NCBI GenBank assembly: GCA_965637545.1 | Contig: OZ281501.1 | Coordinates: forward strand, 15,004,001 to 15,068,000 | Direction: 5' to 3' | Length of the DNA: 64,000 nt | Origin: Phallusia mammillata | Lineage: Eukaryota | Part shown: in pieces, positions 42,001 to 64,000 of the stretch | How the letters are laid out: each line of letters opens with the position of its first letter | Position numbering within the stretch: the stretch's first letter is position 1 | Position numbers and translations under genes: made by a program | The notes under the pieces: generated by a model | Database searches by the model: none | What the model saw: only the letters and a program-made list of their open reading frames with translations | Told to the model about the DNA's origin: nothing

Positions 42001-45000
42001 TCCAGCGGGAATATTATGCGACTTTTTATATTTGTAATGGTTTTGCTTGCGTTTGTGGTGCGGTATGCCAATGTGTTGTTGTTAAATGCAATTGATAATA
42101 TTTCGGTACAGTTTTGTAATGAACTAATATATATATTTGGCTATATCTTTGACGTCGAAAATGATTTGAATACCGCCTTATGCATGTGTGACCGTTTCTT
42201 GTTGGGGATGAAACCGCAGTTGTTTCAGGATAAAGATACAGTTTAAATTTAATGTTCAACTAAAGTTTATTGTTACAAAATACGAAGCGAATGAAAATAA
42301 CTGCATTAAAATAAGCTGTTTTCATAAACACACGGTAAAACAAAATGCACTGTTGTATGGAGTGATTGTGCATTTTGAGCAACCATTTGGCATCTTTAAA
42401 CACTGGTGGCAAAAAATGGCAAAAATGCCCTGCGGATAAATTGCCACCATGACTAACCCAGCTGGCGCAATTTTAAATCAAAACATTTTCCATTTTAATA
42501 ATCGGAGTCCAACGCACCTACAAACAATAGATGGACTCATGAAGTGATTCACATTTCCATCTATTATGTCCCACGCATTGTTTTCACACAGCTGTGAATA
42601 TTATTTGTCCAAACTCGATAAAGTTGCCATGATATTACGTGGAAACCAAATCTATGTGCTGGGATGATGATATGACTGTGGTATGTTCGTGGTGTTGTGA
42701 AAAATGTAATATTGCTGTCTGTAGAATATGGGATCTTTTAATTCTACCGTTCCCGCGTGAGGTTTGTTATAACTACTTTCTCAGTTGTGTAGGGTATGAG
42801 CTTTTTATCAAAAGTTTATGAAATTGCACTCATTCCATAATGCATACCACAAAACGTTGTAAAAATACACTTGGGTAACTTTTAATAACAAGTGGTTACT
42901 ATTATGGTGCTAAAAAAATCAATGGTGAAACTTCCGCAACAGTTACAAAAAAGCAAGTGAAACTAAATCAATTATTTGAAACATGCTTTGAGAAAGCATT
43001 CATATACATTCAACTTATGCGGATTAAGCTTAATTCCTATTTTACGCGGCGAATTCCATACTGTGTTGCGATCCAACAACTGCGCAGCAACCTCGAATTA
43101 AAAGTTCAAAGGTCAAGGGTCGCCGCGGTCGATTGTTCTGGACCAAGTTCATCTTTTGATCTCTCTTATGATTGGTAGGTTCAGCGAACAGCACAAGCAC
43201 TTCGGAGTCCAAATCCCAAGCGCGCAACTTAAACCTCATCACTTGCGAGGAATGCGGATTGATTTGCGCCGGACAGAGTCACTACCAAGTTCACATTAGG
43301 TCGCACACTGGTAAGAATAAAGTGTCAATAAGTTCGCTAGCAGGGGTGAACTTTTTCAACATATTGTAAATATCCAATTTTAGGGCAAAAATTGCATCAA
43401 GTTTCAAAACGTCCATTTGGAACTTTAACAATTTTGAAGATAATGTATTTTTAATGATAGAAATTAATTTAAAGTAATCTCTTTTTTAAATTTTAAATTT
43501 CAAACCTCATGGAAGCATCCAGATACCACGATAAGAATCTGATCATTTTCCCAAATTTGTAAAAAAATAGGGTCGTTTGTTTGGTATTTTAATGATAATA
43601 CATAACGTTTAAATATCTCCGAATATTTACAACTTCGTCGTTTATAACAAAGAACCATAAATGTACAAATAGGTTTTGGTGTATTTTACTCAACCGCGTT
43701 GTTATTGTACCACATGAGCAGTCATTGTTTTCTTGTTAATGAAGTCTTCTTGCATATGGCTAGTTACTAATAGCATCGGTGCAAATTTATTAGCTTTTTG
43801 GACGTTCAACCTTTATTAGACTTACGTGTTTCAGGAGAGCGCCCTTTCAAGTGCAACATATGCGGGGTAGCGTTCACACAGAAAGGAAATCTACGGCGTC
43901 ATTACAAGATTCATTCGGAGGAGAAACCTTACCAGTGTCCTGTGTGCTCGTACAGATGTCGAAGACGGGATGCATTAAATGGACACATGAGAATACATTC
44001 AGGTGATGCCCTAAACTTATTTGTGCATTTTTTTGGAAACAGCCAAACAGTAAGGTCCTAGATCTAATGGTTTCGGTTGGCCCAAAGAAAGAAACAGTTG
44101 CAATGACTTATTGGACTAAGACGCTTATGGGCTACATTCGAAAATCCTGCTCGGAATTAGTACTCAGCAGCGCACCGGGTTCAAAGAATAAAACTTAATT
44201 CCACGTACTGGTGTGGCAATGAGTGTTTAAGTCTCTAAAAAAATAAACGGAATTAAAGCTACTACTTGTAAGTCTTAGGAAAGTGTTATAATTACCGCAG
44301 AAACTGTAGTAAACTTAAAAACAACAACATGCCATTTGAGTTTTAGAATTATGGGTAACACACAAGTGACATTAAGTCATTGTTTAACGGAGATTTTTAC
44401 TTGCATATTTATGACAACAATCAATGTATTGTAATAGCTGAGTCTAAATTTTATTTGTTTTTCATAATGTTCATTTTACTCCAGTCAGTACGATATGTTG
44501 TTATTGTTTTGATTTAGATGTGCGTCCCTACCGATGTGTCTACTGCGCACGAAGCTACAAATCAAGACAGTCACTTAAAGAGCACGAATACCAATGTCCC
44601 TACAAGAACGACCCAGTGGCTCAAGGTGAGTTTTTGTTTCATATTCAACAAACATTTTTGCCAACCTTTCATTAAGTATATTTCGGGAGAAATTAAATTT
44701 GGTTTTTGTTAATTTATTTGCTCTGGTAATTTCAATATTTGCTCAGCATTGTTTTTTTTTCGTATATGTGCTTGTCTGTATCTTTTTCAACTTTGTCATT
44801 TTTGTTTCCTAGTTTTCGCTCTTTTTTCATTTGGTTGTGAGCAGAAAATTGCAAGCACCTTTCACGGCGAATTGAAATCCCAAGCCCTTTAAATATCCTT
44901 TTGAAAACCACAACCAACTTGAACATTTTTGTTTCCGGCGATTTAGGCATCATCGTGCATAATAAGCGCCTAAAAGTTAGAAAAACCTAATTTCCGCATT

Positions 45001-48000
45001 CCAAACGAGACAGGTGGTTGGAATTGAAACCACGGCATTTGGAAAATATAATTAGTGGTTAAGCGATTACACGGTGAGCAGTTTGTACACGCAAGCTTGT
45101 GACAAGTGATTTTTGGACAAAAGCAAATTGGTTAACACTTTATCAGCTCGCATTACTAATACAAACGAAGTTTAAACATAATGAAAATGAAACGTTTTTA
45201 CACATGGTAATCGTTTCAATGAAAAATGGCGTTATTAATGTTATATGTTACTTGACTTGAAAAAAAAAAAATAATAATAATAAAGCAGTGCTTTGGTCTT
45301 GAATTTGGTCAACAAACAGTGTTCTAAAAAAGATATCAGTCTCTTGTTGAAATTAAATTGATTTTGTTATTTTATTTTCGACCAGTTGCAAAATTAAACA
45401 TAATTTTAAAAAGCTTTAGAACGTATATTAATATTGCAAAGCAAGGTCGACTGATTTTGCATGTGTCAGTTTAAAATAAACTTATAAAGCAAAGGGCAAC
45501 TAAAACTTGGCACATAGCATTCTCCAAGTCAAGCAGTAAGATATGGGCTTGAAAATGTTTAAAAGTTGCATAATCGGTTGATCTATATTTATCATCGCTA
45601 AACCAAAATAAACTGATGCCAAACAAAGCAGGTTTTGGTGCTTAGTAGGCACGCCCAGCATATCGCACACCTAAGGGAAAAGAAGGTGCCTGTAATGCGC
45701 TGAATTCAATTCTGGCTGCTGTCGACCATTAATTCTTATGTGTCATATAAAAACTCCCAAACTCTATTGGTTGTGGCAGCTTGGATCATTAGTTTTTATG
45801 GCAGAGCCTAATGGCTTCCTGTCATGCTCGGTTATTTTGATGTGTTGTTTCCATTTGGCGCTGATTTACGTTTAATTGGGCTTTTTGCCAAGCCCATTAA
45901 ATCACTTAGATACTCTAATTTACCTTTTAACCCCGCGGTTTGCAAAACAACAACTTTTACTAAACACGGTTATTCCGTTTTTTTTTGCATATTGCCATTC
46001 AGCATGAAATGAAATGGTATGAAATGAAATGTTTTAGTATTGAAGGTTCTGGTATCATGCTTAAAAACTATCTTGGAAAGACAAAAATGCCAGAGAGTAT
46101 GTATACAGTAAACAAATATTTAGAAGCCTTCATATCACACATGTAGGCAATTTCTGGTAGGAAATAATCCACGTAGCAGCGTCTGCAATTAAACGTATCG
46201 ACCATATACAATTCCTCTGTCTGTTATGTTTTCATAAAGTTCCGCATCCAATTCTAATACGAATGTATTCCATCTGTTTCACAAGTCCGAGAGCGTAATT
46301 TTGACAACAAACAGGTTTTGCTGCTTTAGGCAACTGGTAACAGCTGTTAACGATTTAAAGTGTGCGTGCATTCATTTAATGGTTCATGTTTTTGTTTTCC
46401 CTTACAGGACAACAAGGAAACGCTGGTTCTCCTGCAAAAACAAACATATCCGAGAAGCAAACAAACAAATTATCTCCGATTCAATCATCTTTTACCCAAG
46501 CACAAGCTCTACAACGGATCCTTCCGTCCTCCGTAATCCCATCAGTGTTACAAAACCAACAGCTTCTAGGCCTAAACAATGCCACCAACTCGCTTATGCA
46601 AACATCAGGATCAGCGACAAGCAGCAGCGGGAAACGGAAGGCGTCGAACCCGCAAAAATTTACAAGATTTAGTAAAGCTACTTCGAGTTCACTTGTCGAA
46701 GCACCAAAGACCTCGTCGTTTATGAATAACTCAGTGGCGAATGCTTTGCAGTTTATGCCGTCTTTGCTGAACACGATGATGCAACAAAGACAGTTGCAGG
46801 AAAATTTAGCAAGACAAGAACCGGAGGTATGTGAGTTTTGGCCTAATTTTTCGTTTTTCCTTGCAGTTAATGTTCTGTAAACATTGACCTTACCAGCTGA
46901 CATGTTTTGTACAAGTTTCATATTACAACTGATTTTGTGTTGGGATACAGGGGTAGTTTTTTTTAATATCAAGCATGACATAATAAGCGTGTCAACATAC
47001 AGTAGTATTCTGTTGTATTCTAGTATTCTGTAACAAATAAATACAGTTCAGTGAAGAGTATCCGGAGCTTATATAAGAGCAAACACTTCAAAAACTTTGT
47101 CAAACGTTGCGAATGTATCCCATTGCGGTTTAGGACCAAAATAAATCCTAATCTCGGCTCATACTTGCTACTCTTTGTTTGTCGTTCTGCATGGAACTTT
47201 TTAATTGGCCAATAAATCATTAAACCATTGCTTAGAACCTGCATGCGTTAACCATCGGAAACACCTTTGCAGTTCAGCATTGCTAGGTCATAAAATTTCA
47301 TAGTTTTTTTTACAATATCGCAACTTTTTTCAGGAGAGAATGTCGCCACAACAAGACGTAGCCATCGACTTTTCGGCAAAACGACCTTTTATCCATGGTA
47401 AGAACTTAAACTTTTGTCTCCGATATTGCTAGATTGCACGTCTTTGTGTTGTTCTGTAGGTTTCCAAAAGCCTAGAACAGCAAATTCCTTGCGCATGCAT
47501 TTATGTTTCGCTTGACCATTGACCTTTCGTTTGCTTGTGCCTTAACGCAGCCCCCGCCAGCAGTGAAACGGAACGAATCTCTTACGCCACCAAGCGGCCG
47601 AGAATCGACGGTGAGTTTGTTCTGGCGACCACCAGTGATTCTGGAGATCAAGAAAACGGGAGAATTAGCCCCAGTGAAGTCGCCAAGAGCGCTTTTACAG
47701 CTTACACATCTGCCGAAGGTTTATTTTGAAATTTGAGTTCGATTTTTGCTATTTAGTTTGTTTAGTTATTAACTATTGGGTGTGTTTATTTTGTATTTAT
47801 CTCTGACGAGGAATGCACAACGTGTAGCCTGCATGTGACCAGTTAATTAACGCACAAGATTACCTTTTTATGCGTTTTTTTTTGCTATATTCTAAACATG
47901 TTCTCATTTCATTTTTAAAAATATGATCCTTTCTTTGAAAAACCTTCACGGGAATGTATTTATAACCGTTAAAACTCTGTATTTCCAGATGTAGGCAGCT

Positions 48001-49009
48001 ACCTCAGCAGCATGTACGCCAATACCGAAGCCAATGGTCAACAGAACTTCAATAACGAGAAACTTTCTGGCAGCGCCCGTAGAAAGAGGCCAAGATATAT
48101 GAATGAACGCGTTCTTGATGCTCGGGAATCCCCCAACCCTATTGATTCGAAACCATTGGAGGTATGAAGTGTATGCGTAAGGTGGCGATAAAGGGCTGGG
48201 ATTGACTGGGGTAGATTTGAAGTTAATATGAGTCTTAACTTGGAAAAATCATAAAAAAATGTTGACATACAATTCTTTGTGAATCTTTGACATACAATTC
48301 TTTGTAAAAATTCTTTGTGAAAAATGTTTTTTTTTAACTTGTGGATGTCATTGAACCATTTTTTATCTTTTAGATTGACACTGAGAATGGATATTACAAC
48401 TCCAAGTCTTCTCCCGAGAGATCTCAACATTTGACGCCTAAATTGTCTCGCTACGTCAGGAGTCCTGGTGCTACGTCACTGGACCTGTCAAACGAGCGCG
48501 CGTTGAAGCGTGAAGACGCCGCTGTGAAAGACGACGAGCAGAACGTGCGGTTACTAGGCAACCTGCAGTCGGGCGATGCTTCCCGCTCCGGAATTCGCCT
48601 CTTCCTGACAACGGAAGCGCATGGCGACATCCAGGAGTTGAAAGCTTTCGTCTGTTCCCACTGTCATTGCCTATTCCTTGATCACGTGATGTTCGCCCTC
48701 CACGCCGGTTGCCATGGTTTCCACGACCCACTCGAGTGTAACGTATGTGGTTACCGGGCAACCGACCGTTATCAGTTTCAGTCGCATTTGACTCGCGGGG
48801 AGCATCTAGTGGTGGGAATGAGCACCGGCAGCACCGAGTCCGACGATCCCGACGCAGCTCTTTCTTCCAAGATGAGCGACGGCGGCGACAAGGTCGATAC
48901 AAGGTCATTGAGTCGTGCCGATGACGCACCTGTCGCCTTGACAACCATGTCAAAATCGGAAAGCCCGCTGATGCACCGTTTTCCAACCAAGGCCATTGTG
49001 AGGTATTAA
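39020..49009 (+). CDS. IKZF1: Ikaros-family C2H2 zinc-finger transcription factor (about 690-726 aa); likely pro-orthologue of vertebrate IKZF1-4
   Basis: Exons 39020-39173, 40353-40511, 43179-43310 (ZF1 [21 protein letters not shown]), 43835-44002 (ZF2-3 [23 protein letters not shown]...[10 protein letters not shown]), 44518-44625 (C2HC ZF4 ...EHEYQC), 46408-46826, 47334-47397, 47551-47610 or 47551-47718, 47989-48161, 48374-49009 (dimerisation fingers [51 protein letters not shown]). All junctions are in phase. Confidence 0.93.
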
Positions 49010-51653
49010 TGCACTAGCATTTTGCTACGTCATATTGACGTCACTTTTAGTATAGTGACGTCAAACGAAGCTGCATTGATCCAGATCATGCACTTCGATA
49101 CGCAATTTTTGTCGGTACATTTCCATTTATAAGTTGCACATAAACTTTATTCCAAGCTGTTCTATTCATAATAGTACGTTCTTAATCGTTGGTACATTGC
49201 ACCTTAGTCTAATTTACGCCACTTTACGCTATCGGTAGATGGCGCTGAGCTTCGTCCAAGTGGGCGCCTTCCTGTTTTTGTCAGTTGTATTTGTTTATTA
49301 ACATGCTACTCCAGACAGTGCTTTTTAATTGGGCGATTCCCCATTGACATTTTGCGACTTATTTTATGCTAAACTCTGCTGCCTACCCCGTACGTCTTTT
49401 GTAATTATCGCGCGTAAATTTTTGCTTATGTAGAGTGATGTTCGCACAATGTTCTACCTCCGTGCACTTACTAGGTCTTGTAGTTCCCCGCACCTAATAA
49501 GTGTTTATCAGAATCTCGTTTCAAACATGAATAATGTGATGCTTTCAGAATATTTTCTCGGTCTTTGTTGAAACAGATACGTAATTTTTTTACCGACTTG
49601 TTGCAACAAGACAATGTATTTTGTTGGTACAAGGATTTTTAAGTTTTAACATGATGATTACAATTATAGAAATAGGGTAATGTTATATTTGCTTAAATTT
49701 TATAAATTGCTGCGCATAATGAATGTTTTTCCATGAAAAGTGGGTTACAAAATCGAATTTTATCAAGCTTACCACGCGGTGTGCTAATAACTGTTTTTAC
49801 CTAGTACTCACAACATTTAACCTATTGACACTTTATTGTTTACCTTGATCTTGCGAAAGCATCTATTTCAAACTTTCTCACGCCACCAGTGGTTGCCGTA
49901 TCAGTGGCTGTGCAAGTTTAAATCAAGTTGCGTTGGACGCGAAGTAATTGTTGCCGTATAGATATTAGCCTGCAGTTTCATGAAATTATGCAATTTGGTA
50001 TATGCAACCACGGGACCTCGATTTTTGCTCTTAGTGATCAGCTGTTTGCAATTTAGTCACCCCTTCTTTAATTCACATTCACAATTGCCCTTCCAGTCCA
50101 CATTTGCAACTACTCTTAACGTGTGCATTTTTTCTTAATGTGTGCATTTAATTTTTACTGCACTGAAATATTAGTACACTTGCGACAACTTAAAATCAAC
50201 TGTTTACGCAAAGTTTCACAGAACTTTGTTGCACTGGCAGTGTTTTTCAACTACATATTGCCTGTAAACCCGAAATATACATGTTTATTCCAACTTCCAC
50301 CCATAGTGCTACCTCTAAACCTCCTCCCCACCCTTCCCAATGACCTCAAGTGACCCCTTCGAATCATTGTCACTAAGCTCTTCACTCTGTCTTCAACCTG
50401 CCACAGAAACCGTATTGTTTGAAATTCTAATTTTTTTATTGCTATAACCGCATTTTATTAACACGAATGTACGTTCATACATACATAAATAAGTTATATT
50501 TATATATAATTTTAAATTTCGTGCTTTTTCGTGCATTGTCGCACTTTCTTGTAGCTTTTCATTGTGCACACGCATTTTTGGTGTAACATTTTTGTTCTAT
50601 ACTGCGCAAAGTGCAATTAGCCTTTTTTCCTTAATTATATTTAACACCAAGTTCTTGCCGAGGTAATTAAGACCGCTAAAAACATCTTACCAAAAAAACT
50701 TTTACTTTAGCATTTCTACTTTTGGGGACTTATTGTCGAACAAGATTTTGCAAGGCAGATAAAACGTACTAACACATCTATCAAAAATTTTGCCACTTTA
50801 ACATCGCTTTAACTACCAAGTCCTCATTGCCCTAAAATTCAAAAACAAGCAGCAGCCGTAACAACTTAAAAAACACAATTATGTAATCAAACTCTCATCC
50901 AATCACAATTCGTTTAACTTAAGTCCACTGTCCCGTAACGACTAACTTTACTCATATTAGTTACCTTTTCAACCCTCGAAGTGTTTCCATTTGCAGAATC
51001 AAGCCATTTTCAATCTTGTAGGATTGAATCTTCTTGAGCCATAAAACCGCATTGCAACCTTCTAAAGGGCATTCAATCTTTTTCATTAAGTAAAACGGCT
51101 ATAATTCAAAAATCTCTTTTTCTCTATCATGGTTGTTTACAAAACTATCTACACTAGAGTGTTAAAAACCGTCAAGATAGGCGCTCTGTCGATTATGCTT
51201 TAATTTAACGCTATACCAGTATTACTAATATCATGGATTAAAGACAATTTAATTATCTTTTTTATGAATTGTGTTATTTTCGTTTTTGTGTTGGTGATTC
51301 TTTTTCCTCACAATGATGAAAGTCCTCACAAAACGTGCAGATTGATTTCTGTTGCTATTTGATTTTTGTAAGTGTTATTATATTACAGTGCCTTTGCTTA
51401 ATGTTAAAATGAGTGTTTTCTGTATTAGTATACACATTTGTAAATATTTAGAACAGATGTTTGTAAACCTGAGCAAATTCTTGTAGTTACATGTGCTACG
51501 CAAAAATATCCTTTAACCCACTTTTAAACTTTACCTGACGTCAGTTTTAGCCTACATAACAAAACAAAAAATTTGAGAGGTAACAAATAATGTTGCCGGG
51601 GCAGGGTGGCAGTTTTCCAGCCCAATTCGGCTGGTTTTGGACCTCAAGTTGGG

Positions 51654-51870
51654 TAGAGCTACTAACACTGAGATTTGGCTTAGGCCCGGTCTTGAGAACT
51701 TCTGGTAGGTGGCGCAACAAAGCGTAGGCGTTTATGGTGCTGTTACAGCAATTGGGGATTATGGTAAGAATAATTGCTGAGTCAGCACCATAAACGCCTA
51801 TGCTCTGTTGCGCCACCTACCAGAAGTTCTCAGACATGGCCTAAGCCAAATCTCAGTGTTAGTAGTTCTA
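51654..51870. mobile_element. Foldback element: two arms of about 100 bp around an 18-nt loop
   Basis: 51654-51753 pairs with 51772-51870 (about 8 mismatches, 1 indel); flanked by acctcaagttggg (51641-51653) and acctcaagttgcg (51871-51883). Confidence 0.85.
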
Positions 51871-53028
51871 ACCTCAAGTTGCGGTTGCGTTTTTTAGCCT
51901 GATTGTCAAAAAGGCGTGTTTTCTTATTTTACATGCATTTGGACTTACATGCGCCAATGCAAAGGTTGAATGACGATCACATTGGGCTCGTTTTGGGCTT
52001 TTTACAAGCAGAGTGATGACCCACAAGCCAATCACTCACTGTTTTCTCACCTCAATAAAATAACATGAAATGGAATGTGTAATTGTTGCTTAGCATTGTG
52101 ATGCAGCACATCAATCACGTGATTTTGTTGACAAACCGCGGGATTTTTACCTTAGTGTTTTTCAATCAGAAAAGAATTTTAGGCGAGAATTTTCACTTTA
52201 TTTGTTGAATTTGTACAGAAAGAACTTGAATTCTTTGTTTAATTTTGCGTCGTGTATCTATTTTGTAGCACACAGGAGATAAAAATGTGAACAATTGTTC
52301 TGTAGGTAATATTATCCCAGGCGTAAGTTTTCATTTTACACGAGTGCATCTTTTGTTTTCTTTGTTACCCGGGCTTGTTTTCCACGCCCTTCAATCGGAA
52401 AAGGTGGAGAAGGTAAGGTCAAAATAAATCCAAACATTATAGGTCAACTTATTTTGTCACTTAAAAAAAAGTTACGACTTGCAAGCAGTTTTTTCAGACA
52501 TACAGTTATTTATTCTTTCATAAATAAACTCTGCTAAAAGTTACAGTAACAGTGTACACAATGTTCAGTAACACACAAAAAAATAACATTTTGAAGATAA
52601 AACAAAAATTTCCTTTCTCTTCACAGCATGCCAACACAAATCAACATTTTCCATTAAAACTTTTTAAAAGTTTCTTCTCTGTTAATCTCACAGTATTAGA
52701 AATTGAGGTGTTTAATGGATAGGCAGCTAAATCAATAGACTACACTTAAATAATGCTGACATGTTTTGAAACTTTGGTATATGTTAAAATTAGTTCGCTG
52801 TAAATTACTTTTTTTTCTGATGTTAAATATGCATTTGAATGGTAAAAAGGTATCCTCTTGTAGTGAACTTATACAATGTGATGAAAACTGCCACTTGGGA
52901 CCATCTGTAAAAGTCATATAGGGTATTAATATTTCAAATTGATAACTTTTTTACCACATGATAATGTTAAAATCTACTACTTTTAGGTAACTTCCTAACT
53001 CCATGTTAACTTGGACAAGTCAAGAGTG

Positions 53029-54589
53029 TTACTCAGTGGAAGATTCCGATATGGGTTTTAGCTGTTCAATAAAGCTCTTGGTTGCAGGTTTTGCTTTTCG
53101 TTTTGTAGCTTCACTGGTGACTTGATTATGTTGTGCTGATTTCATACCCTCGGTATCCTTAGATGGTCGCCTGGTGCTGGCTTTTACAACAGGTAATCCA
53201 CCCGACTGCACACTTTGACGTGTTTCACTCAGGCGTTGTAGCATTCTCATGACCTTCAGCTGCTCAGTGAAGTGCTGATTTATCATGTTTAGTTTATCAA
53301 TATGTGACATTTCTGACAGCGGTAACCAATGTCTTGTATGACAGGTTTCGGCTAGATTGTCAATTGCCATGGTAATACGGCCAAGTTCACCAATCAGTGT
53401 ACGATGTGATAGTGTTGTGTCCCCAGCCTCTTGTTCAAGTCGCTGTACCCGTTGGGTCAGTGTTTCTTGGTATGTTTGCAATTCAGACATTTCACTGTTG
53501 ATCATCAACTTTTGCTTTTCACGCTCTTGTTTCAACTCTTCAAGTTCTCTCTGTCCCTGCTCTATGTCCTTCGCCATTGTGGTGTTCCGCTGCAGCAAAT
53601 TAGCATGAGTTGCAGCCAAGCCTTCATAGCGCTGAATCACACTTTGTATCATGTTTTCACCAGTCATTTCAAGGTAGTTTTCTGGTAAAATGTCAATAAC
53701 TTTCATCATGTACTCTTCATATTTCTTGTAACTTTCCAGTTTTTTTAGTAGTGCTGCTTTGTTGTCCTTTGTTGTGTCTAATTCAGATTTAACTTCCAGT
53801 AACTCTTTAGCTCTTACTTTATTTTCCTTTACTTCGAGTTGATACTTTCGCATTGCTCGAGTCCTTTTGGCATCATTTTCCTTGAGAAACCTGTCAAACT
53901 TTGTTACTCTGTCTTTAATTTTCTCCTGTCTTTTCTTAAGAGCTTCCTCTTTGGCCTTGTTTTCTGCCATCCGCTTGCGAAATTCTTCTCTTTTTTCTGC
54001 AAGCTCTTTGTCAATTTCCTCCACCTCCACAGCTTTGCGAAGCAAGGATGTTTTCTGCAAGGTATTGATTCCAGTGTGAAGTAACTTGTCTGCCGTCTCC
54101 TTGACAATTGGAAAGCGACGGATGTCATCATCTGAAAATAAACACAACTAATATTCATGTTCTGTGCTTATATTTTCAATGCATAATTTTTGCAATACTT
54201 AAACCTAATTCATGTATCAGCAGTAAGGGGAAATTATGTATATTTTCATGGCATTTGAATAAAGCCAACCACTTTTAACAATAACATGTTAATCATTGAA
54301 ACAAAATTATGAATAGCATAATAACTAAAATTGTCCACAACCAATTGTACATGTTTATTTTCACTAGTGTATTTTCACTACATTAAAAAAGATATTTGCC
54401 AAATTTACAAAATATTGAAAATAAAGTCCAAATTTTTCATGAACACACATAATGCTTAACCATGATACAAACTATTCAATCTGGTTTACCCTCTGCCTGC
54501 TGTTCATTGAGTTGGGTGACAAAAACATTTCTCTTTTGTTGCTCAAGGTTTAGCTGGTAAGAGTTATTTTCTGTGCTTGAAAGAGGCAT
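53029..54589 (-). CDS. DUF4200 coiled-coil protein (CCDC42/CFAP73/CCDC197 family), about 400 aa
   Basis: Exon 54589-54490 (MPLSSTENNSYQLNLEQQKRNVFVTQLNEQQAE) joined in phase 1 to 54131-53029 (372-aa ORF in the track). Long heptad-rich segment KREEFRKRM...LKKRQEKIKDRVTKFDRFLKENDAKRTRAMRK is typical of the family. Confidence 0.82.
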
Positions 54590-54782
54590 CTTGATGAAGT
54601 ACCACAAATTGGTCTTCTTTTACATTACACCTAAATACCTGAAATACAGTATCATGAAATAACTGCAGTCAATAATAGAAAACAATATTGCATCAAAAAA
54701 CTTTTATGATTAGGGAATTTTTACCACATGTAAAAATTTCGGTTTAATACATGGCAATGGCAGCAAAAGCTGGGATACACTT

Positions 54783-56261
54783 TTACAATGTACTGTCAGA
54801 TTTCGGTTTTGCAGACCTAGCATAGAGCACCACCATAGGTTTTCCAATCAACTGATATCCATTAACAGAATTTAGAGCTTCTTTGGCTGTTTTAACACTT
54901 GGCATTCCTACAAAGGCTTGGCCCTTCATTCGTCCTTGTGTCATAACTCTCACATCAAACATTTTTGCTTCTTCCTCATTGTCAAAATCAACAAATGCAC
55001 CAAAGATATGCCGCATATCCTTATCTGTAACCTTTTTAGACAGGTTTTTGACATATAGTCGACAAGACGGTTCCCCTGGACGATAATTTTTAAACACAGA
55101 GTGTGATGACATGTCTTTACTGCTTAATCTACCAGAATCTAATTGTTTTCTGGATATGAAATCAAAAGATATTTTGTAATCACTATCATCTTCTTCAGTG
55201 TTTACATTTTCTGTAGCATGCTTAGGCTTAATTCTTCCGAAGCCAGACCCAGTTTCTTCGGCAGAAATTGCATCGTTAGTCTTATCTTCAGATAATTCAA
55301 TGGATGAAGGCAATTTTAACTTAATATGCTTAGTGGCTGCACTAACTTCAGATTTGTCAAAAAGTATGCCATCTTTGTCACCAGTCTGGTGAGTTTGTTT
55401 GGCCTTTAATGTGTCTGTGTCCTTTAGTCGTGCCAGCTTTCGTTTTGGTGAACTAGAAATTGCCTTTCTCTTCCGTTTTAAAACCCTAAGTACTTTTTCT
55501 GGAGGCAATAGATTGGGGTCGAATTTTTTCGATGTGTCTTCATTGCTGCTTTCATATTCAGACTCTGTGTTACTCACCATTTCAACATCACTTTCTTCCA
55601 TGTCATTATTCCCACCTGCAGAATTAGGCTGCAAAGTTTCATTAACATTCAATGCCTGTTTTATGTGTTCTATCAGCATTGGAGGAATATGTGTTGCTTG
55701 CGAAAATGGACAATACATGTTCATTTTGTTCATCAAATGCAAAACTTGGGTGTAAAACTTTGGAACTGTAACCAGAGCAGCACAAATATTCAACAAAATG
55801 TTGGAGTTTGGTTCAGGATATTTGTATTTTAATCCAGGATTTGCAGGATATTTCAAACCAAACCCAGGAGCAATTGGAGGCAGTCTGCGGCAGAACTGAC
55901 ATTTTTTACTATCAGTATTAATTTTATTAATAGCTTCTTTAGGTTTAGGTTCAGTCTCTGTTTTATCACTGTCGTTTATTCTGTCATCAGTGTTAATTTT
56001 TAGTAAATCATCATGACATTTTCTGGCATATTCAACTGACAGAGTAAAATCTAGTATTTCCAACTGATGTAACTTTGTCAAAGCTTCCTTTGCATTATTA
56101 TCGTTTTCAAATGTTATAAATGCAGTGTTTTTGAATCGTCCATGGTCTGGCATTATCCTGATGTCTTTGGGACCAAACAACTCAAACAATTGTTTCTTTT
56201 CATTTTGACTAAGACTCGGTGGAAGATGCTTAACAAATAGTGTCTTTTTGTAATTTGACAT
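54783..56261 (-). CDS. RNPC3: RNA-binding region-containing protein 3 (U11/U12 snRNP 65K), single exon, 492 aa
   Basis: N-terminal RRM (LFVKHLP...TAFITF...LHQLEIL), signature YKYP.P...NI..AL..VPKFYTQVLHLMNKMN, C-terminal RRM (YRPGEPSCRLYVKNL...GRMKGQAFVGMPS...GKPMVVLYARSAKPK). Confidence 0.95.
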   Translation of the reverse strand: MSNYKKTLFVKHLPPSLSQNEKKQLFELFGPKDIRIMPDHGRFKNTAFITFENDNNAKEALTKLHQLEILDFTLSVEYARKCHDDLLKINTDDRINDSDKTETEPKPKEAINKINTDSKKCQFCRRLPPIAPGFGLKYPANPGLKYKYPEPNSNILLNICAALVTVPKFYTQVLHLMNKMNMYCPFSQATHIPPMLIEHIKQALNVNETLQPNSAGGNNDMEESDVEMVSNTESEYESSNEDTSKKFDPNLLPPEKVLRVLKRKRKAISSSPKRKLARLKDTDTLKAKQTHQTGDKDGILFDKSEVSAATKHIKLKLPSSIELSEDKTNDAISAEETGSGFGRIKPKHATENVNTEEDDSDYKISFDFISRKQLDSGRLSSKDMSSHSVFKNYRPGEPSCRLYVKNLSKKVTDKDMRHIFGAFVDFDNEEEAKMFDVRVMTQGRMKGQAFVGMPSVKTAKEALNSVNGYQLIGKPMVVLYARSAKPKSDSTL

Positions 56262-56637
56262 TGTGAAGTAATAAATTCATAACCCTACAAGCAAGCTGCA
56301 TAAAATGTATTGCAAACTAAAACAAACATACTGTTGAAAGTTTGTTAACTGTTGAATGATGTTAGATTTTAATTAGTTTGTTCTATTCCGTATCACTAGG
56401 AAAAATCAAAGTAGCAAATAATTTTAAATAATGCACAATATTTGATTGAATGTTAACTAACCGCATTACCCGAACTTAGTAAAACTTACACTAGCTTGGC
56501 AAAACTTTCATTTTTGCGTTGAAACAATTGACAAATATCCAATTTTATAATTTCAATTTCAACGTTGTGGATATTTTATTTCTTGCGCTGCTTTGCCTCT
56601 AGTGTCAGGAGTTTTATTCCAGAGAAATAATATACAA

Positions 56638-56651
56638 CTTGCCATGGCAAC
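56638..56651. promoter_or_regulatory. RFX X-box
   Basis: CTTGCCATGGCAAC, 13/14 match to the palindromic GTTGCCATGGCAAC; about 380 bp upstream of the RNPC3 ATG. Confidence 0.65.
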
Positions 56652-59600
56652 CGTTAGATTACTTTTTAACCTGGTAACATATATGTCAGTTTATGCAAGC
56701 CAAATTTTGACGGGAAAATATTTAATGAATGTTAACTGATTTAACATTATATTTTCCAGTTTTGCAAAGGTTTAAATTGCCTAATGATTTAACTAATGAT
56801 TCACGCAAAACAAACAATGGTAAGCGTTTGCTAAGATCCAATGCAGAAGCAGAACCATTAAAACTTACATCTGGTCTCGTTCTGCATTATTCCAAACTTT
56901 GGGTAGTTTCCAAAACCATACGTAGCGGTTTCGTATGTATCAGTTTGATTTTTGTGTTAAATCTGTTGATTACTGGTGGATTTCAATTTCGCTACATTTT
57001 ATTGCTGACAATTACAGCAATGCAGGCTACCATTCTGCTTTTTGCACAGCCCACTCACATGGCGTACTGTGGGTGTAATTAATCAAGTTATCCACAGGCA
57101 AAATGTTCGGAAACGTGTGTTTTCCTAAAGCAGAACAGTAAAGCGAGGTTGTCACAGAGCCAGGATGTCTACTTTCCTATTATCCAGAAGTCAGATTCGA
57201 TGGTATTTTAGACAGCTATAGTTTCACTAAAGTTTAAAAAGGATTAGAGTTTCTGCCAAATCTTGTTTTTTTTAAAAAACTTAACTGACCCAATAACTAC
57301 AGAACAATAATTTTACTGGTTGCTGAGGGATGTATAAGTAGTATAGCCTCGTCTGCCAATGGAAAACTGCGGTTTGAGCTGTGACAAAAGTTGAAAAGTT
57401 TTCGTCCTGTTTATTTATTGTGCTGATCTGCAAGTTATATTAAATGAGCGAAAAGTTAGTGCTGTAAAAGTTGTAGATGTAAGTGCAGACTTGTGAATGC
57501 TTGCATTAGGTTTACAATATCCAACAACTTTAGGTTATTTTATTATTACGCAATAAGGATGTGAAAAGTTGCTGGTAACCCTTTTTTGGCAAACTTACAT
57601 CATCCTCTAGCAATTTGACGCCAAAAAGCGCTTTATGAAAAAATACATGATGAGTTCAAACGAGGTCGTAGGCTAGGCTGTTAACATTAGGCAGCGTTTT
57701 AAACAGGTTTCAAACTAAGCAGACGGTTGTAATTTAATAGGCCCAAAAGTTTTGTAAATTGAGATCTATGAAGTGTTACGTCATATCCTGGTCAGAAGAA
57801 AATGTCATTCAAACCTGCTTGACCTATTGGGATTAGTTGGCATAAAAAGTTTGTAATAACATGAAATTATTTCCCATGCTTTTAATCTGGGTTCTATCAA
57901 CCCCAAGAGTTGTACACTTTGCAACATGTGTTTTGTTATTTTAATGTTTTCCAGAACGTAGAAAATAGTAGAAATAATGTCCAACAGGTTTACCAAAGTG
58001 AACTAACGGCTCATTTAACGCAGTGGTTACGCATGTAGCCTAGGCTAATGTTACAGACTTGACAAACAAACAAAGAGTTACAAACCAACCATGTTTTTTG
58101 GGCAGCAAGTTATTCTGTCCAAAAATAGCAGATATGATTTTTTGCTTTTAGGTATAAGTTGCTGACTGTACATGCTAGCTGAAAAAAAAGCAAATCAAAG
58201 ATTTAAATTTTTTTTGATTTAAACACATTTAATTTTTTGCCTGTAGCCTACACACACATTATTCGTACATGGTTGTTATTTCCCCCGTGTATCATTCAGG
58301 TTTAGCAATATGTTTAACAATTTCATAGTCTAATTTAAGCTGTGTTTTACCAAAAAAGGCGCCATACTACTCGCTTTGAAATATATGCTGCTGATAAAGA
58401 TTTTATTTCTCCAAACAGCCAGTTAGGTTGTTTTCAAAACAAACCCCTTTATTGTCGCAATTACCAAGCGCTTGCGTACGGGAAGCGATGTATCTACGTT
58501 AGTGTGGAAGTTGAGAAATAACAACCAGCAGCTAATTAGGAAATAAGCGACACAAATCTGAAAGAGCCGACATACTTTTATCTGGTCTATATCGTTGCGT
58601 CTCTTGTGCTAGCTTGGTGTGCGGTGTTGAACAGGCGTTCTCTGATTGATTCTTTTGCCAGTTTATGTTGTTAAATGTGCGTTTGTTTTTTAAAAACTTT
58701 TTTGCATTAAAATATGTTTTGTTTAGGAATTTTGTAATTCTGTTTGAAAAACAGATCAGAAAAATATTGAAAATTTTGCCGTTTTACGTTATTTTAGATT
58801 GCCATGTTAATTTTTTACTTTTAGTACACGAAAAGCCAATATTACGTAATGGTTACAAAATTGATGAGCTGGTGGCACGTGATTTTCGACACACGTGCTT
58901 ATATGCAACAAACTATATAGTGTTGTAGTGACGGCAAGCCAGTGAGCATCCGTTAAGTGGCCAGCTTTAGCAAACCGGAAGTATCATGTTGCCAATAAAA
59001 GAGGTCTTAGTGCTAACACACTGACAGGGTTGCAAAGTGGTCAAAAATCCTTTTTATATCGAGGATTTGAGTGAAAAAATACTTAATTGTATTCATAATT
59101 TTAGGCAGGCTTAGCATAAACTATAATTTTAGTCAGGTTTAGTATGTTGTGTAAATGTCCTGGCTTTTGTGTAAATTGTGGCAAATAATGTTCTGGGTGT
59201 TGTTTTTTGTTGTGAAAAGGATTTTTTTGAAAAAAGTCTCAACTAAGTACCGGTACTTAAAATAGAATATCCACCTAAAACTCCAGATGTATTTTAGCAG
59301 TGATTGTGATACATGGTAAATCATTTGAGGCAGTAAACGTTTTGTATCTGCGTCTTTTAACAATATATACCCCTCATATTTCTGCCTTATTTCAGTCCAC
59401 TGTAAGGTTGTATATACCGAGTTTTTATGTGTAATTTATATGTTGCAACTGAAAAAAAAAGTTGAAAATTTTTTTTTTCGGCGATGACGCAATGTCCTTC
59501 GAGTAAAAACTGTATGCAGTTGCTCTCTAGCTTAAACCCTTCCCAAAACACACCAGTATTGTTGTACATTTGTCAAAGCTGCTTTATGAAGACCTTCCGC

Positions 59601-61993: not shown

Positions 61994-62691
61994 ATGACCA
62001 CTGTGGCCACCCTAATTACACTGGGCCAATTGGATCAGTTTACCACCTCTTCGAACTGTTTAAATTGCACCGGTTTAAATCAAACAAACGAATATCAAGG
62101 ACAGTGCAAATGGAATCAATTGAATACAGCTCTTGTTGTTTCGTTACTTGTGACACTGTTTTTGAACATTTTTGCTTCGATTATTCTATTCCGGGTTCCC
62201 TTGGTAACCGTTCGTGGCCGTAGCAACCCGGTATACCTTTGTATTCGATTCCTAAACATCAGTGACGTTGCTCAGGTTGGTATCACCGTAGTGTAGTAAT
62301 TTACATATATACAGTGATTGCAGTTTAAGCAATTTATTCAAAAGTAACTGACTTTTCACATTTTCGTAAGCAAGGAGCTAGCTTTCATTATGGTCCACAG
62401 AGCACTGTTAAGAATATTTAAACGAAATAAGAGTTTGTTGACTTATTCCTGATCAGTAGTTTTCGTTTTTATAAAAAAAATTGTGCTTTTCAGAGTTTGT
62501 TACTTCTTGTTATGCCTGCTTTTGCGGACCCGGACTGCGTTTGGTTGGGAGGATCAATAAGTTGCAGCATAATGGGATTTATGGCTCTTTTCCTACTCCT
62601 AGCGTCTCCCCTCATCACTATCCTCATGGCGTTTGACCGTGTTATAGCTCTGTACCAGCCGTTCAAGTATCGAAGTCACCTCGGTCTAAGG
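61994..62691 (+). CDS. Class A GPCR, prostanoid-receptor-like; first two coding exons (TM1-TM3), remainder not found in the window
   Basis: Exons 61994-62275 and 62494-62691, phase 0. N-terminal NCT/NQT glycosylation sites, TM1, LNISD (TM2), W.GGSISCSIMGFMALFLLLASPLITILMAFDRVIALYQPFKY (TM3 and DRY-equivalent) resemble the prostanoid-receptor MA.ER..A...P..Y segment. Confidence 0.78.
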
Positions 62692-64000
62692 GTAAGTGGT
62701 TGTCTATCCTGTGCACTTAAAATAGACAAAATATATATGCTGTAAAATTGACTAATTCTAATGCTGTTTAAGCGGCGTTTTTTACCCAATAAGAAAATGC
62801 GTTTTTATACGGTAGTGTCATCTGTGGGGATAATCAATGGATGTGTTAAAGGGATTTAACGAGACCCACGCAGACCTGTTTATTCACACCAAAGTCGGCA
62901 TTTTTTGTGGTGTACTGTAGAATATCAAAAACTGTGCTACAGTTTTGTCTTACAAATCCATTTTATTCCTTGATGATAAAACAAACATTTGTTTTTGCTC
63001 ATGTTGAGTCCACCGATTTTTAAGTCATCCATAATTTTAAAATTTAAATGGAAAACGTTAAAAGAGAAATTCAAATCACATCTTTACTTATGGAATTTCC
63101 TGGATACACATATCGTTGGTATTTTAGCGCGACGTATAACGAACGTTGATTGACTTCCAATGTCAAGGGCTTCCTCGAAAATGCATTCTTGCAGGCACGT
63201 TTCTGATATTTTGCTTGGCAAACAAACCGGCATCACACCAGCACTGTAATAGGAAGGTTGCATCATTTGCAAGCCTTACTTCCGCTTTTGTTGTCTATTT
63301 GCTTGCAATGAGGACAGTATCCTCGCATACTGCCATCAATCATTGAGATGTTCCCTGAGAACGTACCATATTAAGTTACACGTCAAGATAATATGTCTTG
63401 TATATATATATCGCATGAACTCAAAGTCAAATGGTCGGGAAACACTTACCGTTGATATACAGATCCTATCAATTTGCGTATGCAAGACAGTATAATGTTT
63501 TTTCAGAGATTTGCAATAGGCGTGGACGTTAAAAAGACACAACCTAAATTCCTTCACATATGAAGTAGGGCGTTATTTGCCTATCGCGCACATTCAGTTT
63601 TCATGTTCGTTTCTAAAACTTTACCACTTTACATCTTTTGCATCGTTAAAATGTGATTTCTGTTGCTGTTGTAACTGGTCTACAATCTTCATCAAAGCTA
63701 ACGATGCCTTGATAACGTTGGCGTAGGTAGCGGAAGTTACTGCTACGTTCAAAATCATCTGATAATTTGACAGCTACTCATGCAATATCTAAGTGTAGTG
63801 ACTACAGAAAAGGTAGTGTAAAATAAACTGAAATTAGGCGGTGTCCATATATTTTTTCTTTCATTGCTTGAAATATTGGCAGAAAAGCAAAATTTGCAAG
63901 GTCAAAATGTTGTAATAAATCCGATTCAAATATTTGGAGCATATTGAAGTTTATTAGTCATTCATTGATTCAATCCAATTTGTAATCCAAAAACAAGGTA

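What the first reader, a model, noticed from the sequence alone, without database searches (positions are those of the whole stretch)
53029..56651. RNPC3 and a ciliary-type coiled-coil gene appear to form one transcription unit (operon or shared leader exon)
Seen (minus strand): only 193 nt separate the RNPC3 stop (54783) from the next ATG (54589). A clean acceptor tatttcag| (AG 54640-54639) lies 49 nt before that ATG. RNPC3 has its own acceptor ttgtag| at 56285. A perfect GTAAGT donor sits at 56489, just downstream of an X-box. Known: Ciona has SL trans-spliced operons with almost no intercistronic DNA. Inference, two models: (a) an SL-resolved dicistronic operon; (b) one non-coding leader exon spliced either to intronless RNPC3 or across it to the coiled-coil gene. 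Either would couple a minor-spliceosome component to a cilia gene. An out-of-frame upstream ATG 19 nt before the RNPC3 start may add translational control.
Basis: partly seen in the sequence, partly recalled or inferred. Interest (0 to 1): 0.75.

Follow-up and report, generated by a model that had tools for sequence, protein, structure and literature searches.

The report
Sea-squirt RNPC3–CCDC42 trans-spliced operon
Two unrelated sea-squirt genes, a minor-spliceosome protein (RNPC3) and a cilia coiled-coil protein (CCDC42/CFAP73-like), abut with no spacer, and the second gets the ascidian spliced leader exactly at the predicted site, which makes this an ordinary ascidian operon rather than a new kind of gene coupling.

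Summary
The genome is Phallusia mammillata, not Ciona. The upstream gene is a single-exon RNPC3 (U11/U12-65K). The downstream gene is a two-exon DUF4200 protein identical to the public 'CCDC42 homolog' of Phallusia.

RNA contigs from four studies were laid on the stretch:
- They skip the 358-nt intron, so they are RNA.
- The downstream mRNA ends at AG 54640-54639. One contig carries 11 further letters that, with that AG, spell the last 13 nt of the ascidian spliced leader.
- RNPC3 contigs run 3' to 54640, so there is no intercistronic DNA.
- The proposed leader exon (56490 upward) has no coverage, and no junction uses the 56489 donor.

Model (a), an SL-resolved dicistronic operon, is supported, although no two-gene precursor was seen. 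Model (b), a shared leader exon, is not.

The layout is textbook for Ciona-type operons: single-exon 5'-most gene, no spacer, no AATAAA. The same-strand pair recurs in Ciona, Clavelina and three unnamed ascidians. It is absent in Styela, where RNPC3 has introns, and in a hemichordate.

The X-box is real (13/14) but not conserved. The uATG is real but not conserved.

The scan confirmed the same leader at other loci of this genome.

The parts
56638..56651 (.). X-box-like palindrome (CTTGCCATGGCAAC on +), about 350 nt upstream of the RNPC3 acceptor; candidate RFX site in the promoter region of the unit
   Evidence: 13/14 to consensus; 1 match found against 0.03 expected per 64 kb. Not conserved upstream of RNPC3 in Ciona, L003, L005 or L009.
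56287..56637 (-). Presumed outron and core promoter of the unit. No RNA contig beyond 56339; TSS not mapped.
   Evidence: Zero coverage at 56362-57700 in 4 runs. X2 and X5 contigs run through the acceptor to 56339 and 56311. The length fits Ciona outrons, mean 438 bp (PMC4691747).
56484..56489 (-).
   Evidence: Sequence present. No joint from it and no coverage of the putative leader exon.
56285..56286 (-). AG acceptor before RNPC3; probable SL trans-splice site (inferred)
   Evidence: Contigs of X17 and X1 end at 56284 and 56283, the first bases after the AG. No SL letters were retained there.
56230..56280 (-). Out-of-frame uORF (16 codons plus stop) overlapping the RNPC3 start
   Evidence: Read from the sequence. 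Not present after the acceptor in Ciona, L003 or L005.
54783..56261 (-). RNPC3 (U11/U12-65K, RBM40) coding sequence, single exon, 492 aa
   Evidence: One contig covers 54646-56339 without a joint.
54641..54782 (-). RNPC3 3'UTR, which also holds the pyrimidine tract of the downstream acceptor. No AATAAA; one ATTAAA 35 nt after the stop.
   Evidence: RNPC3 contigs reach 54640 (X17), 54646 (X2), 54663 (X1) and 54689 (X5). Motifs.
54639..54640 (-). AG trans-splice acceptor of the CCDC42 homologue, which is also the intercistron boundary
   Evidence: Downstream-gene contigs end at 54639/54640. The X2 contig carries 11 loose letters that, with this AG, give the last 13 nt of the SL. The 13-mer is absent from the window.
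54590..54638 (-). 5'UTR of the CCDC42 homologue, with a start-stop ATGTAA at 54625-54620
54490..54589 (-). CCDC42-homologue coding exon 1 (33 codons plus 1 base)
   Evidence: The joint 54131/54490 is present in all 4 runs.
54132..54489 (-). GT..AG intron, 358 nt
   Evidence: Skipped in contigs of all 4 runs.
53029..54131 (-). CCDC42-homologue coding exon 2 with stop; DUF4200 coiled coil
   Evidence: 100% identical to P0001.
52489..53028 (-). 3'UTR of the CCDC42 homologue, with AATAAA at 52514-52509; end of the unit
   Evidence: Contigs end at 52489, 52497 and 52529. Sequence.

Best explanation
This is a two-gene, Ciona-type, SL-resolved operon in Phallusia mammillata.

Proposed mechanism:
- One promoter lies upstream of 56339, perhaps near the X-box at 56638-56651.
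- It drives a precursor that runs through the single-exon RNPC3 gene into the CCDC42/CFAP73-like gene.
- Each precursor molecule is either cleaved and polyadenylated at the AG 54640-54639, which gives RNPC3 mRNA, or trans-spliced there to the 16-nt spliced leader, which gives capped CCDC42-homologue mRNA.
- RNPC3 itself is probably also trans-spliced, at AG 56286-56285.

Shown here: SL on the downstream mRNA at the predicted site, upstream transcripts reaching that site, the cis-intron, and no use of the 56489 donor.

Inferred: the common precursor, the single promoter, SL on RNPC3, and the either/or processing (taken from Satou et al. 2006).
For: -: in four runs from four studies the downstream-gene contigs stop at 54639/54640. 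The X2 contig adds 11 letters whose reverse complement plus the genomic AG is CTATTTGAATAAG.
- this is the 3' end of the SL ATTCTATTTGAATAAG (PMC1488885, Table 1).
- that 13-mer occurs nowhere in the window, so it comes from elsewhere (in trans).
- RNPC3 contigs extend 3' to 54640, 54646, 54663 and 54689, which leaves no intercistronic DNA.
- Ciona operons are defined by exactly this layout. Cistrons abut at the AG, 16 of 18 lack AATAAA, and 60% have a single-exon 5'-most gene.
- there is no AATAAA between the RNPC3 stop and the AG.
- the same-strand RNPC3 to CCDC42 order is kept in Ciona, Clavelina and three unnamed ascidian lineages, although published work notes rapid loss of microsynteny in tunicates.
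- another follow-up on this genome saw the same SL at predicted acceptors.
Against: - No contig bridges 54640 with 31 or more letters on both sides, so the dicistronic precursor was not seen.
- All data are assembled contigs. They cannot show poly(A) sites, true 5' ends or rare forms.
- No TSS data were available, so a promoter inside RNPC3 is not excluded.
- In the other ascidians the stop-to-ATG gap is 318 to 1880 nt, so the tight abutment may not be general.
- No SL letters were seen at the RNPC3 acceptor.
Confidence: 0.75

Rival explanations
1. Two overlapping but independent transcription units. The CCDC42 homologue has its own promoter inside the RNPC3 coding region or 3'UTR. Its outron overlaps the end of RNPC3, and SL trans-splicing merely trims that outron, as it does for about half of all monocistronic ascidian genes.
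For: - No bridging contig was found.
- Trans-splicing is not specific to operons; about 50% of Ciona genes are trans-spliced.
- Relatives have gaps of 0.3-1.9 kb, which could hold a promoter.
- A cilia or sperm gene and a housekeeping splicing factor would be expected to need different regulation.
Against: - Satou et al. treat the zero-spacer layout as the hallmark of polycistronic transcription.
- No X-box-like site or other recognisable element lies in the 142-nt 3'UTR or in the intergenic gaps of relatives.
- Conservation of the order across fast-rearranging tunicate genomes argues for a shared unit.
Confidence: 0.17
2. A non-coding leader exon ending at the 56489 donor is cis-spliced either to RNPC3 at 56284 or across it to 54638.
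For: The donor GTAAGT and both acceptors exist in the sequence. A TATA-like stretch follows the X-box.
Against: - Coverage at 56362-57700 is zero in four runs, although the RNPC3 body is assembled at depths of 8-21.
- The only joint reported is the 358-nt intron.
- The letters attached at 54640 are the SL, not the sequence that precedes 56489.
- Two contigs read straight through the 56285 acceptor into unspliced upstream DNA.
Confidence: 0.03

Closest known systems
Ciona intestinalis/robusta SL-resolved operons (Satou et al. 2006, PMC1488885; KH set of 1,310 operons, PMC2760879)
   Same: [quoted passage not shown]
- The same 16-nt SL, of which 13 nt were seen here.
- No AATAAA in the upstream cistron.
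- A single-exon 5'-most gene.
- Functionally unrelated members.
   Different: - The host species is Phallusia mammillata.
- The dicistronic precursor and the poly(A) site were not observed here.
- Whether the orthologous Ciona pair (gap 318 nt) is in the KH/KY operon list could not be checked.
C. elegans SL1-type operons without intercistronic sequence
   Same: The poly(A) site of the upstream gene and the trans-splice site of the downstream gene coincide, and the same SL serves monocistronic and operon genes.
   Different: The nematode examples keep a canonical AATAAA. The lineage and the SL are unrelated.
RFX/X-box controlled ciliary genes
   Same: A near-perfect palindromic X-box lies in the promoter-proximal region of a unit that contains a DUF4200 axonemal-type gene. 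The hemichordate orthologue has a 1-mismatch X-box 153 nt before its ATG.
   Different: - The site here lies upstream of RNPC3, not of the cilia gene itself.
- It is not conserved in five other ascidian loci.
- Styela has a similar site in intron 1 of an unlinked RNPC3.
- Binding is untested.

Membership tests
Ciona-type SL-resolved operon | Neighbouring genes on the same strand | tested here: met
   Both ORFs are on the minus strand, 193 nt from stop to ATG.
Ciona-type SL-resolved operon | Downstream cistron receives the spliced leader | tested here: met
   The X2 contig has 11 loose letters which, with the AG, give the last 13 nt of ATTCTATTTGAATAAG, joined at 54638. The 13-mer is not in the window.
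Ciona-type SL-resolved operon | No intercistronic DNA: the upstream mRNA ends at the acceptor AG | tested here: met
   The RNPC3 contig of X17 reaches 54640, and the others reach 54646-54689. The poly(A) tail itself is not visible in contigs.
Ciona-type SL-resolved operon | Polycistronic precursor RNA | tested here: inconclusive
   No contig bridges 54640. Contigs drop rare nuclear precursors.
Ciona-type SL-resolved operon | Single promoter upstream of the first gene, none internal | not testable with these tools
   Needs TSS-seq or CAGE, or a promoter deletion.
Ciona-type SL-resolved operon | Typical accessory traits: upstream cistron lacks AATAAA; 5'-most gene is single-exon | tested here: met
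   (only an ATTAAA, about 105 nt before the AG). The RNPC3 ORF is uninterrupted and covered by one contig. Literature values.
Shared non-coding leader exon (cis-spliced alternative first exon) | The leader exon is present in mature RNA, with junctions to the downstream acceptors | tested here: not met
   No coverage at 56362-57700 and no such joints in 4 runs.
RNPC3 / U11-U12 65K | Two RRMs with the family-specific extended C-terminal RRM; full-length orthology | tested here: met
   Pfam RRM_1 twice. Match to 3egn/5obn RBM40 at E 1e-45. Vertebrate RNPC3 aligns at about 40% identity over 99% coverage.
CCDC42 / CFAP73 (DUF4200) family | DUF4200 coiled-coil domain; closest to CFAP73/CCDC42 rather than CFAP100 | tested here: met
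   PF13863 at E 1e-25. CFAP73 chains score E 8e-18 to 1e-12, against CFAP100 at 3e-4. Public names are 'CCDC42 homolog'. Ciliary location in ascidians was not tested.
Functional RFX X-box | Consensus match, promoter-proximal position, conservation, RFX binding | tested here: inconclusive
   The match and position are met. Conservation is not met in Ciona, L003, L005 or L009. Binding is not testable here.

The most novel reading that the evidence does not exclude
In the common ancestor of phlebobranch and aplousobranch ascidians, RNPC3 lost all its introns (a processed copy) and came to lie between the promoter and the first exon of the cilia gene CCDC42/CFAP73. This would have created an operon that has been held together since. 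In Phallusia a housekeeping minor-spliceosome gene would therefore be transcribed from an RFX/X-box ciliary promoter. It would be a dated, polarised example of how single-exon 5'-most operon genes arise.
Probability: 0.2. Interest if true: 0.55.

Novelty: new member of a known kind. Interest (0 to 1): 0.3.

Why it matters
The finding gives a cleanly documented operon in Phallusia mammillata, a species for which I found no published operon description in the library searches. It also shows that Phallusia uses the Ciona spliced leader, at least its last 13 nt.

The comparative result has modest evolutionary interest. The pair is kept, with an intronless RNPC3, in six phlebobranch or aplousobranch-type lineages. 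In Styela, RNPC3 is unlinked and carries introns. [quoted passage not shown]

It does not reveal a new mechanism. Nothing indicates a functional link between minor splicing and cilia.

Tried and rejected
- **Shared leader exon:** rejected on RNA evidence.
- **Relic of a retroposed spliced leader upstream of the RNPC3 acceptors:** only the Ciona site reached the 1.6% tail of the background, one of seven tests, so this is not significant.
- **Conserved X-box:** degenerate scans found nothing upstream of RNPC3 or in the intergenic gaps of Ciona, L003, L005 or L009-11. The Clavelina site has 2 mismatches and lies inside the long ORF.
- **Conserved uATG:** rejected.
- **Bacterial-type promoter/terminator scan:** uninformative for a eukaryote.
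- **Dicistronic RNA contigs via exact-protein look-ups:** the Phallusia proteins were not on record. The Ciona protein returned only the genome. The Logan contig L007 was genomic, not mRNA.
- **Literature:** no paper links Ciona to CCDC42, and the only RNPC3 hit is a minor-intron survey.
- **Spliced CCDC42 model:** it was never submitted as a joined sequence. The exons were searched apart by reference, and the join rests on the RNA joint and on the identical public protein P0001.

Full report
**Observation**

I read 52500-57200 on the minus strand and listed the ORFs. Every coordinate in the finding is right.
- The RNPC3 ORF runs 56261..54783 (492 aa, uninterrupted).
- The next ATG is at 54589, 193 nt after the stop.
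- The acceptor tatttcag has its AG at 54640-54639.
- The acceptor ttgtag has its AG at 56286-56285.
- A GTAAGT begins at 56489.
- An out-of-frame ATG at 56280 opens a 16-codon uORF across the RNPC3 start.
- The palindrome at 56638-56651 matches the X-box consensus at 13 of 14 positions. One such match was found against 0.03 expected per window.

**Gene identities**

The upstream protein has two RRMs. Its C-terminal RRM matches the solved human RBM40/U11-U12 65K domain at E 6.6e-46. Vertebrate RNPC3 proteins align at about 40% identity over 99% of the length.

The downstream gene has two coding exons, 54589-54490 and 54131-53029. It carries DUF4200 (E 1e-25). It is closest to CFAP73 chains in axoneme structures (E 8e-18 to 1e-12), with CFAP100 far weaker.

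I searched the exons separately by reference and never submitted the joined model. A public 400-aa protein named 'CCDC42 homolog, Phallusia mammillata' (P0001) is identical to exon 1, the split codon and exon 2. The window is therefore Phallusia mammillata, not Ciona. Notes from other follow-ups on this genome agree.

**RNA evidence**

One run from each of four studies was laid on 51900-57700. All are assembled contigs, so they show presence but not ends or levels.
- All four skip 54132-54489 with GT..AG ends, which shows that they are RNA.
- Downstream-gene contigs stop at 54639/54640 in three runs.
- The X2 contig continues with 11 letters that lie on nothing in the stretch. Their reverse complement followed by the genomic AG reads CTATTTGAATAAG. 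These are the last 13 nt of the ascidian spliced leader ATTCTATTTGAATAAG (PMC1488885, Table 1).
- That 13-mer is absent from the whole window even with one mismatch, so it was added in trans.
- RNPC3 contigs run 3' to 54640 (X17), 54646, 54663 and 54689. No untranscribed spacer remains between the two mRNAs.
- At the RNPC3 5' end, two contigs stop at 56284 and 56283, directly after the AG. Two others read on unspliced to 56311 and 56339.
- Nothing is assembled between 56362 and 57700.
- The only joint reported is the 358-nt intron.

**Interpretation**

This is the architecture that defines Ciona operons.
- Most upstream cistrons lack AATAAA (16 of 18) (PMC1488885).
- 60% of operons have a single-exon 5'-most gene (PMC2760879).

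Here the RNPC3 3'UTR has no AATAAA, only an ATTAAA about 105 nt before the AG. RNPC3 is single-exon. The terminal gene ends conventionally, 12-20 nt after AATAAA 52514-52509.

Model (a) is therefore supported. The common precursor was not seen, because no contig bridges 54640. An internal promoter cannot be excluded without TSS data.

Model (b) is not supported. The leader exon is absent from RNA, and the letters attached at 54640 are the SL. RNPC3 is probably SL trans-spliced at 56285, but that is inferred only from where the contigs end. If the TSS lies near the X-box, the outron would be about 300-350 nt. That falls within the published range for Ciona (mean 438 bp; PMC4691747).

**Comparison with other species**

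An intronless RNPC3 followed on the same strand by the CCDC42 homologue occurs in:
- Ciona (L001, gap 318 nt; 50% protein identity);
- Clavelina (L002, gap 848);
- three unnamed ascidian lineages from environmental assemblies (L003, L005, L009-11; gaps of about 1100-1880).

A fourth environmental locus (L004) had too little upstream DNA to judge.

In Styela clava, RNPC3 has at least six coding exons, and no DUF4200 gene lies within 10 kb. In the hemichordate Ptychodera, the CCDC42 homologue has no RNPC3 neighbour.

The pairing and the intron loss thus look like a shared trait of the phlebobranch/aplousobranch side of the ascidians. They have been kept despite the rapid loss of microsynteny reported for tunicates (PMC5753386). 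Whether the wider-gap species still run the pair as an operon is unknown.

**X-box and uATG**

The X-box is statistically unusual and well placed. However, I found no counterpart upstream of RNPC3, or between the genes, in Ciona, L003, L005 or L009-11.

Evidence from other species is mixed.
- Ptychodera has a one-mismatch site 153 nt before its CCDC42 ATG.
- Styela has a one-mismatch site in intron 1 of its unlinked RNPC3.
- The Clavelina site has two mismatches and lies inside the long ORF.

I put its function as an RFX site at roughly one in three.

The uATG would sit in the mature 5'UTR, but it is not conserved. A test for a relic spliced leader at the acceptors gave nothing significant.

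**Verdict**

This is a real and well-supported operon of a well-known ascidian kind, so it is ordinary in mechanism. About a fifth of Ciona genes lie in such units, and their members are functionally unrelated as a rule. The pairing of a minor-spliceosome protein with a cilia protein is therefore most likely incidental. The modest added value is the documentation in Phallusia, the conservation pattern, and the intron-loss polarity.

Noticed in passing
L001:1816-9565 (Ciona HT chromosome record AP043575.1): In Ciona the pair is preceded on the same strand by two more single-ORF genes: an enoyl-CoA hydratase (ECH_1) and a G-patch/FtsJ protein (CMTR1-like). That makes four head-to-tail genes with gaps of 318-717 nt, possibly a longer operon. 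These two genes are not upstream of RNPC3 in Phallusia.
   Followed up: partly
L008:10479-10492 (Styela clava): A one-mismatch X-box (ATTGCCATGGTAAC) lies in intron 1 of the intron-bearing, unlinked RNPC3. This weakens the idea that the Phallusia X-box belongs to the cilia gene.
   Followed up: no
L006:9848-9861 (Ptychodera flava): A one-mismatch X-box (GTCACCATGGTGGC) lies 153 nt upstream of the ATG of the CCDC42 homologue. This is consistent with RFX control of this gene family in deuterostomes.
   Followed up: no
window 54620-54625 (-): A start-stop element (ATG directly followed by TAA) lies in the 49-nt 5'UTR of the CCDC42 homologue, downstream of the trans-splice site.
   Followed up: no
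window 51651-51873: A nested inverted repeat (arms of 61 nt at 92% and 42 nt at 90% complementarity) looks like a foldback or MITE-like element. It lies about 600 nt beyond the end of the operon, and an RNA contig of run X1 covers 51900-52073 next to it.
   Followed up: partly
window 43798-49009 (+) and 61994-62745 (+): These are the flanking genes. One is a C2H2 zinc-finger gene (Ikaros-like finger pattern by eye) that converges on the operon. The other is a rhodopsin-family GPCR fragment (7tm_1, E 3e-7) about 5 kb upstream on the other strand. About 5 kb of DNA without ORFs lies upstream of the X-box.
   Followed up: partly
window 56284 and the homologous sites L001:6243, L003:4546, L005:3555, L002:5502: In all five ascidians examined, the first bases after the acceptor AG in front of RNPC3 read GTTA or GGTTA. 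This is a small conserved motif at the presumed trans-splice site.
   Followed up: no
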